From Orbicella franksi (lineage: Eukaryota), in assembly GCA_964199315.1 (NCBI GenBank), contig OZ116698.1, positions 17,174,001-17,238,000 of the forward strand: a stretch of DNA of 64,000 bases. Reading direction: 5' to 3'. How positions within the stretch are numbered: position 1 is the stretch's first letter; the number at the start of each line of letters is the position of its first letter. Positions 24,992 through 54,002 of the stretch are shown here, piece after piece. The notes under the pieces were generated by a model. It was given only the letters and a program-made list of their open reading frames with translations. It was not told the origin of the DNA and ran no database searches. The translations under genes were made by a program, and so were the position numbers.

Positions 24992-27900
24992 ATGTCTGTG
25001 GACGCAAGATTACCAAAGAAAAGGAAAAGAATATCAGCTTTATCTGGGTTTGAGCCAAGGCATATTGTATCCCCTGGAGATGTCATAACAGAAGACACTG
25101 GATACATGAGGTAATCAAAGACATCAAACTGCTGCTGTGAATAGTCCGTGTGCGATTGACAATTTTTGAATTGAAGATAGAGCTTATCGTTACTTCAAGA
25201 CTAAGTTAGTTTGTATAAATTCCGAGATGGCATCTGCAGTATCCACATAATATCAGTTTCTAATTTTCAAAATTTGTGAAAACTGGATAAATTATAAGCT
25301 TATATCAAATAGCTTCAATAGAAACATTTCCCAAAACTGTAGATATACTTTGACTAGCTTGCTCTTTTGAATTTCAGAAGGGCTATTGTAGAATGAAGTG
25401 CAGGCATTATAAAGGACAGTGAAACCTCTATTAAGCAGACCCCAAATTAAGCAGACACCCTCTATTAAACAGACACTTAGCCTGGTCCCGAAATTAACAT
25501 GTTATATTTCTCTTTATAACGAACCCCTCTTCAGCGGACACCTCTAGTAAGTAGACACGGACACTAAAATAAATTGTATTTGGCTAATTTCTATTATTAA
25601 AAACCTCTACTAAGCGGACACCGGACTGAATTGACAATGTGGCATTGGATTATGTCCTTGAAATAGTCGATTAAATGTACCTGTGTTATCGTTGCTGTAT
25701 GGAAAGGGCATTATTACAAACAAATTAAAGTTGCTAATGAAATCTGATGAAACTGAACTCTGGATAGCTTCCTTAGAAACCTGGAACTTTATTACAGTAC
25801 AGAGGAACCATTGAATGTTAATTGTTCACAACATTGTGCAATTGTGATAAACCTTTATTAAGCGGACACCCTCTATTAAGTGGACACTTGGGAAGGTCCT
25901 GAGGGTGTCTGCTCAATAGAGGTTTCACTGTAGTACAGATTTCAAGCTGAGGTGGAATATTTTCCTCTTTAGGGGCCATGGTACTCATGTCGATGGTGAC
26001 AAACTGATAGCTTCAGTTGCTGGGGTAGTTGAGAGAGTGAACAAATTGATCTGTGTACGACCATTTAAAACAAGGTATACCATCACTTATAATAAAGGAT
26101 TTACCACCTTGGTTTGCACCTTTGGCCCTCCATAAACTTTCTCTTCAGTGCTAATACTCCTTGAAAAATGCACACTGTACCCCTGTTAACAGTACTACAT
26201 GTATCAGCCTGTGAGGCACTCAGGTGCAGAAGATCAAAGAAGGGAACTGAACAAGTGTAAAGGGAGAAGAGAAGGAACAGTGCACATACCAATGCATTAA
26301 TCAGTGTGTTCTTGAAGAGCACGCCATTGACCAACTGTTGCAAAAGGCCTATTACTGCTATTAATAAATAATTTTGGTTTGATTATTGCAGTAGAGTTGA
26401 TGTTTTACATTACAGGTACAATGGAGAAGTGGGGGACGTTGTTGTTGGTAGAATTACAGAGGTGAGCAGAAATCTACAGTATAAAAGATTGGCCAACTAC
26501 TGCATAGAATAGCAAATGATGGTCACAATGCAACAATTGGCATTGGTTGTAATCATTGTATCTTCAAGGAGCTATGTCATCATGGATTGTTTAATTGCAA
26601 GTTTTTGGTTCAAAATCAGTCTGTTTTCTTCAATAGCCCTTTTCACAGGTAACATTATTCATTTGCATTACAATGTAATCCAACATGGATATGAGGCAAT
26701 TTTGGGCAGAAACTACAAAATTGCCCAGAAGTGCCTCGCATACTTGTTGGCGTATTCTGTAAATGTAAATGAGAAAGGTTGACTGTAAAAAGGCAATTAC
26801 AACCTTCTTTGTTGTTCTTTGGTCTGTTAAACATTTTATTTTTACCAAAGGTGCAGTAGTGGAGTTTTATACAGAGGTGATACATGTTACTGATTTTTTT
26901 TGAAGGTTGGACAGAAGAGATGGAAAGTGGAAACCTTTTCAAGGCTGGACTCTGTTTTGCTTCTTTCCTCAGTAAATTTGCCTGGTGGTGAACTGGTAAA
27001 AAACACATTCCCTAATTCCTGTTTATGCTGTTAATTATTTTCTCATAAGTTTCCACCACTACAGTGAAACATAGGTACACCATAGATGTATACTAATAAT
27101 AATAAAGAACCCATTTATAATGAGTTTCCATCATAGAGGACAATAATCTTCAGCTTGGGCCCAGCTTAGTTTGACTGTTTGTTTTCCAACAGAGGAGACG
27201 ATCTGCTGAGGATGAATTGATGATGCGTCATTTCCTTGCAGAGGGTGACCTGATTAGTGTATCCTTTTGAAATCTACTTTTCTCTGAGTCTTAAATTTAC
27301 AATCAGCTTCATTAGCATTCTCCTTGACTACAGTCCAGGCAGAAGTGCAGTCAGTCTATAGTGATGGCTCACTTTCATTACACACTCGCAGTCTCAAATA
27401 TGGAAAGGTTGGTATGGACAGACACATTTTCGAAAAAATATGCCACAGATGTAATAGTGAAAAAGAGCATAATAATAATCATCAGTCCTTTAGATGCCAA
27501 GTGGCCAGCCTCCAACAAATTTTGACTTACATCTCGTTCCACTTCTCAATTAAATATTTAGTTTCAAATGATTTTTTTTAACATTTCACTTCTGTACACA
27601 ATCTACCATTAATAGCTTCAGACGTTTCATTTTTCTTGCTCACTCTCCTCTCTTTCCCATAACGTTCAATGATTTAGTAGATGATTGTGCCTTCCACTTC
27701 ACAAACAGTAGCACCTCTGTTGTCACCATTTATTTTGATATCGTACTGGTGTTGCAAACTCATAATTTATGGTATTCTAGGGTCTAAACGTTACCTCCGA
27801 GCAAGCTTCGCAGCTTGAAAAAGACTGACATGAACTGATGCCCTGTGCTCCACTTGGCGTCTAAAGGACTGATGATGATGACGATGATGATGATGATGTT

Positions 27901-29686
27901 ACTGTGCATTTTGTTGCAGCTCAAAGAGGGCAGTCTTGTTCAAGTGCCACCTTCTTTAGTAAAACGCTGTAAGACTCATTTTCTCAACCTTCCTTGTGGG
28001 GCCACTGTTATCCTGGGTAACAATGGTTATGTTTGGATTAGTCCTTTGGACAATGAAGATGCTACACTCGCAGACGGCCAGACTGAAAGGCTAGCAAATG
28101 ATGATACAGCAACTAAAGAGGTTATTACAGATAATGAGCAGGATTTAGAATTATAAGCAGAATATAGTGTTAATTTTCACTGGCTCTTTTCATATCTCAG
28201 TTCAGGGAAGAGTTGAACAATTTTACTATATTTCTCAGTTTCTATGCGTGCTGTAATTGATCAATTTAGCTGGTCGTATTCTACTGTACGGCCCGCTATT
28301 TTATAGTTGTTTTTGTTGCCAAAGTGTTTAGTGATTAATCGCCAAGTGTTCTTAACTTTTATAACTGTAAAACTTCCTTTTATTTTAAATCATGTATTGA
28401 AACATGCTAACGACTTAAAAGCGATTTCAAATTGACTTGTTTTGCTTTCGGCGTGCGTCAAAAATTTGAAGCCGTTCCGCGTGAATAGAAATCGTTCCCA
28501 AACCCGTCAGACACACAAAGGAGGCATAATATATATATCTTGACTTACTAACCTAGATTCAGATTCGAAATGTTATACGTTCTGACAAGTTTAGTGCACA
28601 TTTCTAAAGGCAATGACAAATTTTCATGTAATCTAAATAACCTGGAAGTGTTCGATTGGAAAATTATCTCAAAATGTTCGATCCCAGTACAACAAAACTG
28701 TACCAAAACATTAAACAAGGTTTACATTTAAAGTCAGCTTATGTTTTTTTTTTTTTTTTTTTACTGACTTCACTGTTGTTGTAGTAAGATCACAAGTGGA
28801 AGCCTCAGGCCACACTACGCCGGAGGAATTTGTAAACGCCGGCTCTATTTCTACGAGTAGGCCCTTCGTGCACACTAATCTGTCACGAAAGCGCAGCTTT
28901 TCGAAAACGCTCTTCATACCGGAGAAATTTGAAAACACCGGCTTTGTGTTTTAATGTGGACGGAAAAAATTCTGAGAACGGAGCTTTTAGAAGACGACCT
29001 ACCCGAGTTTTCCTCAAACACAAATCCTCAATGACCGGTGAGTTTTGTGTTTTCAAATTCCCCCGGCGTAGCGTGGACAGAAAGCATTTGATATGTTTTC
29101 AGAGTGAAACCTCCTTTTTCAGTTTTCACCGGCGTAGTGTGGACGGAGCCTCACGCTTAATGTTTCCGCCACTGATTTTATTTTATGTTTTAAAGTTTAC
29201 TTGGTGTAATCCAGCATCATGAATTATTATCATTACCGACAGAATAAAGACGTGTAAATGGATCTTAGTAGTAATTTAATGTAACCTGCGTTATACGTTG
29301 AACGTTCCAGATTCAAGACTCAGATCGTGAGATAATAGCCCGACTTCGTAACTGTGTGGTAACACTTACAGATCATGGCGTGATGTTATTCAACACTTCA
29401 TTGCAATATGCTTATGACGCCTCTTTGAAGCACTCGGTAAGCAACCTCGTCAGGTTTGGTTTATGCATCTTTGACTAAACCTTACCCTAACTGACAGATG
29501 GAGATAAACAAGGAAAATCCCTGAAGGCAGTGGAGGCCGATTTCATTGGAGCACATCCTTTACCCTGTGTATACGAAGTCTAATATCTTTGTTTGTTTGT
29601 GTTTTCAGGTAAAAGAATTGCTGAAACCTGAAATCCAAGAAGAAATTGCTGACACTGTTCGTCAACGCCTAATACAAGAACTGTAA
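24992..29686 (+). CDS. EXOSC2: Exosome complex component RRP4, 298 aa
   Basis: Exons 24992-25110, 25973-26074, 26416-26461, 26906-26995, 27193-27258, 27339-27407, 27920-28120, 29311-29436, 29609-29686 (897 nt). They give HIVSPGDVITEDTGYMRGHGT..KLIASVAGVVERVNKLICV..RYNGEVGDVVVGRITEVGQKRWKVE..NLPGGELRRRSAEDELMMRHFLAEGDLISAEVQ..LHTRSLKYGKL..KRCKTHF..LPCGATVILGNNGYVWI..IARLRNC. The exon 7 donor (28120) is the least certain boundary. Confidence 0.96.
25417..25930. mobile_element. 514-bp Tc1/mariner (pogo-like) MITE in EXOSC2 intron 1
   Basis: 24-bp TIR CAGTGAAACCTCTATT(A/G)AGCAGAC, TA on the right flank, and internal AAGCGGACAC repeats. Confidence 0.75.
27259..27338 (+). other. U12-type GT-AG intron (EXOSC2 intron 5, 80 nt)
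   Basis: Donor GTATCCTTT; branch point TCCTTGAC (27321-27328) 10 nt before the acceptor. Splicing joins EGDLIS|AEVQ in frame. Confidence 0.9.
27811..27898 (+). mobile_element. Short RTE-like LINE 3' end with (GAT)n tail in EXOSC2 intron 6
   Basis: ..DALCSTWRLKD* followed by TGATGATGA repeats, 21 nt upstream of the exon 7 start. Confidence 0.55.
28265..28562 (+). mobile_element. Interspersed repeat, partial copy, same family as 57130-57590
   Basis: Shares blocks such as CTACTG(T/C)ACGGCCCGCTA, GAAGCCGTTCCGCGTGAA and GTCAGACACAC with the 57 kb copy. Confidence 0.7.
28808..29150. mobile_element. PIF/Harbinger-like MITE in EXOSC2 intron 7
   Basis: Ends GGC..CACACTACGCCGG / CCGGCGTAGTGTGGACGGAGCC with 3-bp TSD TCA. 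An isolated right end of the same family lies at ~30190-30223. Confidence 0.7.
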
Positions 29687-53600: not shown

Positions 53601-54002
53601 TTCAGCCACGAGCGAGTCAAAAGCAATGTTGTACCAGGAAGACTCAAGTGCACGCTTTGCAGACGAGGATTTAACTCCAGGAGCAACTTACGCTCGCACA
53701 TGCGCATTCACACGTTGGAAAAACCTTTCCAGTGCAAATACTGCAAGAAGTCCTTTTCGCAGTCTTCAACGCTTCGGAACCACACCAGACTTCACACCGG
53801 AGAGAAGCCTTACAAGTGCAATGTATGTCACTTCGCGTACTCGCAGCTTGCAGGACTGCGCGCTCATCAGAAGTCCGCTCGACATCGACCATTACATGAA
53901 GCTGCTAAAGCAGCGGCTCAAAAATCGAAAGGTCTTCACGACGAGACAAATCACAGCGAGCGTTCCCCAGACTCCCCTAAACTAGAAAGCACGCCTCAAT
54001 AG
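44668..54002 (+). CDS. PRDM12: PR/SET domain zinc finger protein 12, 400 aa
   Basis: Exons 44668-44842, 47339-47637, 48623-48932 and 53584-54002 join in phase (1203 nt). N-terminal [19 protein letters not shown] matches vertebrate ITSDILHSFLYGRWRNVLG. PR domain: [32 protein letters not shown]|[36 protein letters not shown]. Three C2H2 fingers, [68 protein letters not shown], are characteristic of PRDM12. Confidence 0.95.

What the first reader, a model, noticed from the sequence alone, without database searches (positions are those of the whole stretch)
24992..54002. EXOSC2 and PRDM12 are neighbours, as in human 9q34: candidate ancient regulatory linkage
Seen: EXOSC2 (+) is followed 15 kb later by PRDM12 (+), with no intact gene that I can identify between them. 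Established: in human, PRDM12 and EXOSC2 are adjacent and co-oriented at 9q34.12, with PRDM12 upstream, so the order is swapped here. PRDM12 specifies nociceptive neurons in vertebrates. Inference: a developmental transcription factor kept next to a housekeeping gene across the cnidarian-bilaterian split fits a genomic regulatory block, with PRDM12 enhancers in or near EXOSC2. I do not know whether this pair has already been reported.
Basis: partly seen in the sequence, partly recalled or inferred. Interest (0 to 1): 0.75.

Follow-up and report, generated by a model that had tools for sequence, protein, structure and literature searches.

The report
Coral EXOSC2 next to PRDM12
In this coral the housekeeping gene EXOSC2 and the neural transcription-factor gene PRDM12 are true neighbours, as in a sea anemone and in vertebrates, so the pairing is probably very old, but the tests I could run give no sign that EXOSC2 carries PRDM12's control elements.

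Summary
Observation confirmed. EXOSC2 (9 exons, 291 aa, 24992-29686, +) and PRDM12 (4 coding exons, 400 aa, 44668-54002, +) are intact and single-copy. They lie 14,981 bp apart, and I found no gene between them. The PRDM12 model is 100% identical to Orbicella faveolata XP_020626980.1.

The ancient-linkage reading is partly supported.
- The two genes are also immediate neighbours in Nematostella (convergent, 5.7 kb apart).
- They are neighbours in a bird (tandem, 2.2 kb apart, followed by ABL1), as at human 9q34.12.
- Side and orientation differ in all three.
- EXOSC2 is not a neighbour in the octocoral Xenia or in Trichoplax.
- It is not within 10 kb of PRDM12 in a jellyfish, a nemertean, two limpets, a hemichordate or Acropora.
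- Trichoplax keeps the other human neighbour, a FUBP-family gene, beside PRDM12.

The regulatory-block reading failed every test I could run.
- EXOSC2 is compact, with no intron above about 1.2 kb.
- EXOSC2 shares no non-coding conservation with Nematostella.
- PRDM12's conserved non-coding DNA lies in a repeat-free block at 39.4-54.6 kb, in its introns and the 5 kb upstream.
- That DNA stayed with PRDM12 when the gene order changed.

Most likely this is a relic two-gene microsynteny, with PRDM12 controlled from close by. The scan had not noted this pair before.

The parts
24586..24759 (-). First coding exon of COG7. Its ATG lies 232 bp from the EXOSC2 ATG, head to head, so the two genes probably share a bidirectional promoter.
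   Evidence: Pfam COG7 matches profile positions 1-24 here (E 5.9e-5, under the cut-off). Further COG7 exons lie at 15448-15876 and 17596-18009. The distance was computed.
24992..29686 (+). EXOSC2/RRP4 coding region. The nine exons are 24992-25110, 25973-26074, 26416-26461, 26906-26995, 27193-27258, 27339-27407, 27920-28120, 29332-29436 and 29609-29686. The exon 7/8 junction is the least certain. The product is 291 aa and intact.
   Evidence: tblastn with bird RRP4 P0181, spliced model, 67% identity, KH_6 and PDB RRP4 matches, single copy.
29687..31470 (+). EXOSC2 3'UTR or transcript tail. Weaker read-through continues to about 32445.
   Evidence: Continuous polyA RNA depth in run X23, and contigs 30189-31469 and 30179-31400 in runs X9 and X13.
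31471..39443 (.). Spacer that is not conserved with Acropora and carries interspersed repeats (29.5-30.5, 32.4-33.0 and 35.5-37 kb). No domain-bearing ORF.
32495..32746 (.). Head-to-head pair of tRNA-like units (32495-32564 on -, 32674-32746 on +) belonging to a multi-copy, SINE-like repeat.
   Evidence: Rfam tRNA at 52.9 and 62.3 bits. RNA word depth in the thousands with loose ends. A copy lies in the Acropora upstream region at L030:1192-1302.
39444..44667 (.). Conserved non-coding block upstream of PRDM12. About 80% of it aligns to Acropora at about 74% identity. Collinear elements at 42922-42967, 43179-43297 and 44466-44549 reach Nematostella. The block is free of repeats.
   Evidence: blastn, six-frame tblastx showing it is non-coding, repeat map.
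44668..54002 (+). PRDM12 coding region. The four exons are 44668-44842, 47339-47637, 48623-48932 and 53584-54002. The product is 400 aa with a PR/SET domain and three C2H2 fingers.
   Evidence: The spliced model is 100% identical to O. faveolata XP_020626980.1. Exon 2 is single-copy in the genome.
45563..47026 (.). Conserved non-coding sequence in PRDM12 intron 1. The core at 45613-45727 is shared with Nematostella.
50886..51215 (.). Conserved element in PRDM12 intron 3, 87% identical to Acropora. The core at 51080-51170 is 90% identical over 91 bp to Nematostella intron sequence. It is rich in TAAT and ATTA motifs and looks like an enhancer.
   Evidence: No Rfam family matches it.
58655..61126 (-). 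Single-exon gene of 823 aa with YEATS and 3HBD domains (YEATS2-like), convergent with PRDM12. The same neighbour is found in Acropora and in the octocoral Xenia.
   Evidence: Pfam YEATS at 1.5e-26 and 3HBD at 2.4e-25. Loci L030 and L028.

Best explanation
EXOSC2 and PRDM12 are intact, single-copy, expressed neighbours in this Orbicella-type coral. The adjacency is most likely a relic of an old gene neighbourhood that predates the cnidarian-bilaterian split. Vertebrates keep FUBP3-PRDM12-EXOSC2-ABL1, hexacorals keep the PRDM12-EXOSC2 half, and Trichoplax keeps the FUBP-PRDM12 half.

How the locus probably works is inferred, not shown. PRDM12 appears to be controlled from a compact, repeat-free, conserved block of about 15 kb, made of its own introns and about 5 kb upstream. 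This block moves with the gene. EXOSC2 appears to be driven by a 232-bp bidirectional promoter shared with COG7. It ends in a tail of about 1.8 kb and is separated from the PRDM12 block by about 8 kb of unconserved, repeat-bearing spacer. On this reading EXOSC2 is a passive neighbour at the edge of PRDM12's regulatory domain. It is not a bystander gene that houses PRDM12 enhancers.
For: Shown:
- Gene models and their integrity.
- Adjacency in Nematostella, convergent and 5.7 kb apart.
- Adjacency in a bird, PRDM12 then EXOSC2 then ABL1, and in a second sauropsid contig. The human order is given in PMC8774373.
- Trichoplax PRDM12 lies 4.1 kb from a FUBP/KHSRP-family gene.
- Non-coding conservation with Acropora (about 74%, locally 86-91%) is about as high as in the coding exons (77-82%) and is confined to 39.4-54.6 kb.
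- Four elements reach Nematostella, all upstream-proximal or intronic to PRDM12 and collinear with it.
- In the EXOSC2 region only exons 6 and 7 align to Nematostella.
- The spacer holds repeats and no spliced polyA transcript where I could lay reads.

From the literature:
- Two-gene microsyntenies between cnidarians and bilaterians number in the hundreds, and their orientation is often not kept (PMC3514665).
- Cnidarian cis-regulatory elements sit close to their genes, and microsynteny there is poorly conserved (PMC10719294).
Against: - The adjacency was seen in only three lineages, and two of them are hexacorals. This is below the four-lineage cut-off of Irimia et al.
- It is absent in Xenia and Trichoplax, where both neighbours are known.
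- It was not seen within 10 kb in six other animals. Common ancestry therefore needs several losses.
- I could not see beyond 10 kb from PRDM12 in any other species.
- Absence of DNA-level conservation in EXOSC2 between coral and anemone is weak evidence. Even most EXOSC2 exons do not align at that distance.
- Metatranscriptome runs hold 32-54% of the words of 39.6-44.66 kb. An upstream non-coding transcript or a long 5'UTR is therefore possible and was not resolved.
Confidence: 0.6

Rival explanations
1. Genomic regulatory block. PRDM12 enhancers lie inside or right beside EXOSC2, so selection forbids breaks between the two genes. That would explain why they are still together in hexacorals and vertebrates.
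For: - The pair has the right make-up: a developmental transcription factor beside a housekeeping gene.
- Adjacency survived at least two local rearrangements, since three different arrangements exist.
- PRDM12 is embedded in dense conserved non-coding DNA, as regulatory-block target genes are.
- Chromatin loops over tens of kb do exist in Nematostella (PMC12221973).
Against: - EXOSC2 is 4.7 kb long with introns of about 1.2 kb or less, whereas bystander genes typically have long introns (PMC3514665).
- No non-coding element in or next to EXOSC2 is shared with Nematostella.
- All elements that are shared stay with PRDM12 although EXOSC2 changed sides.
- The conserved block stops about 9.8 kb short of the EXOSC2 stop codon, at 39444.
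- The pair is broken in Xenia and Trichoplax.
- In sea anemones regulatory elements are reported to be gene-proximal (PMC10719294).
Confidence: 0.15
2. Coincidence. The two genes sit on the same ancestral chromosome-scale linkage group and came to lie side by side independently in hexacorals and in vertebrates.
For: - Order and orientation differ in coral, anemone and vertebrate.
- The pair is missing in every other lineage I could view.
- No other 9q34 gene was detected within +-100 kb of the window. This rests on a tblastx search for FUBP and a Pfam scan of the ten longest flanking ORFs.
- By my own estimate, with gene order scrambled inside about 20 linkage groups, a few dozen shared adjacencies between a coral and a human are expected by chance.
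Against: - For one given pair the chance is about 2 in a few hundred to 2 in 10,000 (my estimate).
- Truly retained pairs outnumber chance ones several-fold (PMC3514665: 595 pairs, false-positive rate below 0.0002 per pair at their cut-off).
- A second, independent match to the vertebrate neighbourhood, FUBP-PRDM12 in Trichoplax, makes an old neighbourhood more likely.
Confidence: 0.2

Closest known systems
Conserved ancestral microsyntenic pairs (CAMPs) of Irimia et al. 2012 (PMC3514665)
   Same: Two unrelated genes, one a developmental transcription factor and one a housekeeping gene, are neighbours in deeply diverged animals (hexacorals and vertebrates). As in most non-head-to-head CAMPs, orientation is not conserved.
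   Different: I saw the pair in only three lineages, against the four or more required, and in a +-10 kb view rather than a window of four or fewer intervening genes. I could not check their supplementary list, so I do not know whether this pair is already in it.
Genomic regulatory blocks with bystander genes, such as Otx-Ehbp1 and Islet-Scaper in Irimia et al. 2012
   Same: The target-like gene PRDM12 is surrounded by dense conserved non-coding DNA and depleted of repeats, with a housekeeping gene as neighbour.
   Different: The supposed bystander EXOSC2 is small, has short introns and shows no conserved non-coding elements. The conserved elements are intronic or proximal to PRDM12 and move with it.
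Human 9q34.12 neighbourhood FUBP3-PRDM12-EXOSC2-ABL1
   Same: PRDM12 and EXOSC2 are immediate neighbours and co-oriented.
   Different: The order is swapped, with EXOSC2 upstream in the coral. No ABL1 or FUBP was found within +-100 kb. The coral's other neighbours (COG7, KIFAP3, YEATS2-like) are, from my own knowledge, on other human chromosomes.
Gene-proximal regulation model for cnidarians (Zimmermann et al. 2023, PMC10719294)
   Same: The conserved non-coding elements lie within about 5 kb of PRDM12 or inside it. They accompanied the gene through the coral-anemone rearrangement, as that model predicts.
   Different: That paper stresses loss of microsynteny in cnidarians, whereas here a two-gene adjacency has nevertheless persisted in two hexacoral orders.

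Membership tests
PRDM12 orthologue | N-terminal PR/SET domain followed by three C2H2 zinc fingers, with best matches to PRDM12 rather than to other PRDM subfamilies. | tested here: met
   Pfam PRDM2_PR, SET and zf-C2H2 hits. PDB 3ep0 (PRDM12) matches at 5e-16, against 1e-6 for PRDM14. The top named homologues are all PRDM12. The product is 100% identical to the annotated O. faveolata PRDM12-like protein. The subfamily is reported in cnidarians (PMC4760075).
EXOSC2/RRP4 | N-terminal ECR1_N, S1 and KH domains in one protein of about 290 aa. | tested here: met
   KH_6 at 1.5e-14, and ECR1_N weak on the single exon. PDB RRP4 matches at 3.9e-16. The full spliced product is 67% identical over 289 aa to bird RRP4.
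Conserved ancestral microsyntenic pair (Irimia 2012) | The two genes are not paralogues. | tested here: met
   Their domain sets are unrelated.
Conserved ancestral microsyntenic pair (Irimia 2012) | [quoted passage not shown] | tested here: inconclusive
   Adjacent in coral, Nematostella and vertebrates. Not within 10 kb in eight other species. The tools cannot see four genes away.
Genomic regulatory block | A developmental regulator gene beside an unrelated bystander gene. | tested here: met
   PRDM12 beside EXOSC2.
Genomic regulatory block | [quoted passage not shown] | tested here: not met
   EXOSC2 spans 4.7 kb and its longest intron is about 1.2 kb. The bird gene spans 3.6 kb.
Genomic regulatory block | Conserved non-coding elements inside or flanking the bystander gene. 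| tested here: not met
   In a sensitive blastn of 24.0-39.5 kb against the Nematostella EXOSC2 side, only coding exons 6 and 7 align.
Genomic regulatory block | Enhancers in the bystander gene that contact and drive the target promoter. | not testable with these tools
   This needs Micro-C, 4C, ATAC or reporter assays.

The most novel reading that the evidence does not exclude
FUBP-PRDM12-EXOSC2 is a neighbourhood more than 600 million years old, older than the placozoan, cnidarian and bilaterian lineages, and it is held together by PRDM12's regulatory landscape. On this reading the anthozoan conserved elements found here, including a 91-bp intronic element that is 90% identical between coral and sea anemone, are ancient PRDM12 enhancers. 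They would offer a direct way to study how the sensory or nociceptive neuron programme was wired before bilaterians arose.
Probability: 0.15. Interest if true: 0.6.

Novelty: new member of a known kind. Interest (0 to 1): 0.35.

Why it matters
PRDM12 specifies pain-sensing neurons in vertebrates. How its expression is controlled outside vertebrates is essentially unknown.

If the pairing with EXOSC2 is ancestral, it adds one more example to the several hundred deep two-gene microsyntenies already catalogued. That is useful as a marker but not surprising.

The more practical result is negative for the proposed mechanism and positive for a different one. The conserved regulatory DNA of the coral and anemone PRDM12 is compact and close to the gene. 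A handful of short, sharply conserved elements can now be put straight into Nematostella reporter assays.

The FUBP-PRDM12 link in Trichoplax suggests that the vertebrate 9q34 arrangement preserves a very old neighbourhood.

Tried and rejected
- Pfam family searches of the coral's own genome for FUBP_C and the ABL F-actin-binding domain found nothing. They also rang in no control genome, so they are uninformative.
- A tblastx search of the Trichoplax FUBP locus against +-100 kb around the window gave no hit.
- The ten longest ORFs in those flanks are a retroelement, rhodopsin-type GPCRs and KIFAP3. None is a 9q34 gene.
- The supplements of Irimia 2012 and Touceda-Suarez 2020 are not held.
- The supplements of Robert 2022 and Zimmermann 2023 hold no PRDM12, EXOSC2 or FUBP3 names, but they may list blocks by orthogroup.
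- No paper in the library links PRDM12 and EXOSC2 by synteny.
- Dendronephthya isoform X2 and Acropora muricata PRDM12 were not on record for locus look-up.
- The metagenome scan gave mainly the same coral, plus one sauropsid contig that repeats the vertebrate arrangement.
- No Rfam family matches the conserved block.
- None of the four anthozoan conserved elements was found in octocoral, jellyfish, placozoan or bilaterian PRDM12 loci.
- The single protein-representative search returned mostly exon fragments. It served only to supply EXOSC2 reference proteins.

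
Full report
**What is in the window.** The window is G000:C1:17174001-17238000 of a 497-Mb coral assembly. From left to right it holds:
- KIFAP3 on the minus strand (KAP domain at 437-733).
- COG7 on the minus strand, with its first coding exon at 24586-24759.
- EXOSC2 on the plus strand.
- A gap of 14,981 bp.
- PRDM12 on the plus strand.
- A single-exon gene with YEATS and 3HBD domains on the minus strand (58655-61126).
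- The start of a kinase-like gene (its Acropora counterpart carries a Pkinase domain).

**EXOSC2.**
- A bird RRP4 protein (P0181, named) recovers nine exons by tblastn.
- With canonical GT-AG junctions they splice into an uninterrupted 291-aa protein.
- That protein is 67% identical to the bird protein over 289 residues.
- The KH exon matches Pfam KH_6 at 1.5e-14 and PDB RRP4 chains at 3.9e-16.
- The gene is single-copy.
- Its ATG lies 232 bp from the COG7 ATG on the other strand, so the two genes probably share a bidirectional promoter.

**PRDM12.**
- The PR/SET and zinc-finger exons match Pfam.
- The best PDB match is the human PRDM12 PR domain.
- All the best named homologues are PRDM12.
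- Full-length coral proteins revealed a further 5' coding exon at 44668-44842.
- The four-exon model gives 400 aa and is 100% identical to O. faveolata XP_020626980.1. The window therefore comes from Orbicella or a very near relative.
- The gene is already annotated in public databases.

**The gap.**
- None of the ten ORFs I scanned in and around the gap (68 to 128 aa) reaches a Pfam cut-off.
- Similarity to other PRDM12 loci falls in all six frames, which means it is non-coding.
- Rfam finds only a head-to-head pair of tRNA-like units at 32.5-32.7 kb. These belong to a multi-copy repeat that is also present upstream of Acropora PRDM12.
- polyA RNA reads and contigs laid on 29.7-35.7 kb show a continuous EXOSC2 tail to about 31.5 kb, weaker to 32.45 kb.
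- The same data show three repeat peaks with loose ends, no splice joints outside repeats, and silence from 34.1 to 35.7 kb.
- The word shares of the polyA runs over 29.7-39.6 kb (0.38-0.49) are almost fully explained by what was laid.
- I could not lay reads on 35.7-44.7 kb. Non-polyA metatranscriptomes hold 32-54% of the words of 39.6-44.66 kb. An upstream non-coding transcript or a long 5'UTR therefore remains possible.

**Is the adjacency shared?** I could view only PRDM12 (or EXOSC2) plus 10 kb on each side in other species. Species where the two genes are adjacent:

| Species | Arrangement |
|---|---|
| Nematostella vectensis | PRDM12 (+), then EXOSC2 (-) 5.7 kb downstream, convergent |
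| Bird, Myiozetetes | PRDM12 (+), 2.2 kb, EXOSC2 (+), then ABL1 (+) |
| Second sauropsid contig | Same as the bird |
| Human, 9q34.12 | ABL1, EXOSC2 and PRDM12 listed at increasing distance from a SNP inside ABL1 (PMC8774373) |

Species where EXOSC2 is not adjacent or was not seen:

| Species | What flanks PRDM12 |
|---|---|
| Xenia (octocoral) | An unrelated 314-aa gene upstream, the YEATS gene downstream |
| Trichoplax | A PAP2 gene upstream, a FUBP-family gene downstream |
| Rhopilema, Lineus, Patella, Lottia, Ptychodera | No EXOSC2 within 10 kb |
| Acropora | No EXOSC2 in the 10 kb upstream, of which 2.4 kb is gap; YEATS and kinase genes downstream, as in the window |

The Acropora result is compatible with a coral-like 15-kb spacing, so it is not evidence of absence.

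**What the pattern means.** The pair exists in three arrangements:
- EXOSC2 upstream and co-oriented in the coral.
- EXOSC2 downstream and convergent in the anemone.
- EXOSC2 downstream and co-oriented in vertebrates.

A single-gene inversion converts the coral arrangement into the anemone one. For a given pair, chance adjacency in a second lineage is of the order of 2 in a few hundred genes if both lie on one scrambled ancestral linkage group. This is my own estimate. Irimia et al. report several hundred truly retained pairs, and find that orientation is kept in only 15-25% of pairs that are not head-to-head (PMC3514665).

Trichoplax PRDM12 lies 4.1 kb from a gene of the FUBP/KHSRP family. 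That gene has several KH_1 domains and a weak FUBP_C hit. Among natural proteins in the PDB, FUBP1, KHSRP and PCBP2 are the best matches to two of its exons. From my own knowledge, FUBP3 is the other neighbour of human PRDM12. Two independent partial matches to the vertebrate neighbourhood make common ancestry the best reading. I put it at about 0.75 to 0.8, counting both the passive and the regulatory versions.

**Is it a regulatory block?** Irimia et al. list four predictions for such a block.

| Prediction | Result here |
|---|---|
| A developmental regulator beside an unrelated gene | Met |
| Long introns in the bystander gene | Failed: EXOSC2 spans 4.7 kb and its longest intron is about 1.2 kb |
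| Conserved non-coding elements in the bystander gene | Failed where testable: only exons 6 and 7 align to the Nematostella EXOSC2 side |
| Enhancers in the bystander gene that act on the target | Cannot be tested here |

PRDM12 itself, by contrast, sits in a block at 39.4-54.6 kb that is free of interspersed repeats. That block is densely conserved with Acropora:
- About 80% of the 5.2 kb upstream aligns.
- 72% of intron 1 and 36% of intron 3 align, and none of intron 2.
- Only the 3'UTR aligns downstream.
- Identity is about 74%, locally 86-91%. The coding exons are 77-82% identical.

Four elements reach Nematostella:
- 42922-42967 and 43179-43297, upstream.
- 44466-44549, at the promoter or 5'UTR.
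- 45613-45727, in intron 1.
- 51080-51170, in intron 3, 90% identical over 91 bp and rich in TAAT and ATTA motifs.

These elements are collinear with PRDM12 in Nematostella, where EXOSC2 lies on the opposite side. The conserved regulatory DNA therefore travelled with PRDM12, not with EXOSC2. This fits the published view that cnidarian cis-regulatory elements stay close to their genes and that cnidarian microsynteny decays readily (PMC10719294). It does not exclude longer loops, which do exist in Nematostella (PMC12221973).

**Verdict.**
- The claim of an old linkage is plausible and now rests on tool evidence from an anemone and a bird. Its phylogenetic spread is patchy, and my view of other genomes was narrow.
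- The proposed mechanism, PRDM12 enhancers in or near EXOSC2, failed each test I could run.
- I file the pair as a probable relic two-gene microsynteny, a new member of a well-known kind.
- I could not check whether it is already in published lists. No paper in the searchable library mentions it.
- The scan's earlier notes do not contain this pair. They hold two analogous claims in the same genome, OBI1-POU4 and RBM19-Lhx1/5.

Noticed in passing
L001:10001-21601 (Trichoplax DS985242.1): Trichoplax PRDM12 lies 4.1 kb from a convergent FUBP/KHSRP-family gene. From my own knowledge, FUBP3 is the other neighbour of human PRDM12, so the vertebrate neighbourhood may be older than the EXOSC2 pair alone suggests.
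   Followed up: partly
window 53584-61126; L030:18942-24654; L028:12474-15201: PRDM12 (+) and a single-exon YEATS+3HBD gene (-) form a convergent pair shared by this coral, Acropora and the octocoral Xenia. KIFAP3 is close to PRDM12 in both this coral and Xenia, but on opposite sides.
   Followed up: partly
window 51080-51170 (within 50886-51215): This element in PRDM12 intron 3 is 90% identical over 91 bp to Nematostella and 87% identical over 336 bp to Acropora. It is rich in TAAT and ATTA motifs and matches no Rfam family. It is a candidate deeply conserved anthozoan enhancer.
   Followed up: partly
window 37000-56000: The whole PRDM12 locus and its 7 kb upstream contain no interspersed repeat detectable against 264 kb of local context. 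The EXOSC2 side of the gap does carry repeats.
   Followed up: partly
window 24759-24992: COG7 and EXOSC2 start codons lie head to head 232 bp apart, which suggests a bidirectional housekeeping promoter.
   Followed up: no
window 8553-14261: A 5.7-kb tandem array of a 27-bp purine-rich unit (about 212 copies, 74% matches) lies within the COG7 gene span. It produces long spurious ORFs and a strong GC and AT skew.
   Followed up: no
window 22729-23477: A tandem array of a 68-bp unit, 11 copies at 96% identity, lies in a COG7 intron.
   Followed up: no
window 32420-32821; L030:1192-1302: The head-to-head tRNA-like pair belongs to a multi-copy repeat. RNA word depth is in the thousands, many reads have loose ends, and an 88% identical copy lies upstream of Acropora PRDM12.
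   Followed up: partly
L019-L023 (50-100 kb beyond the window's end): A tandem array of intronless rhodopsin-type GPCR genes, with at least four ORFs matching 7tm_1.
   Followed up: no
L025:1-25985 (Rhopilema SWAQ01000795.1): Rhopilema PRDM12 is annotated as nested inside a 1523-aa Urb2 gene model on the opposite strand. This could be real nesting or an over-extended gene model.
   Followed up: no
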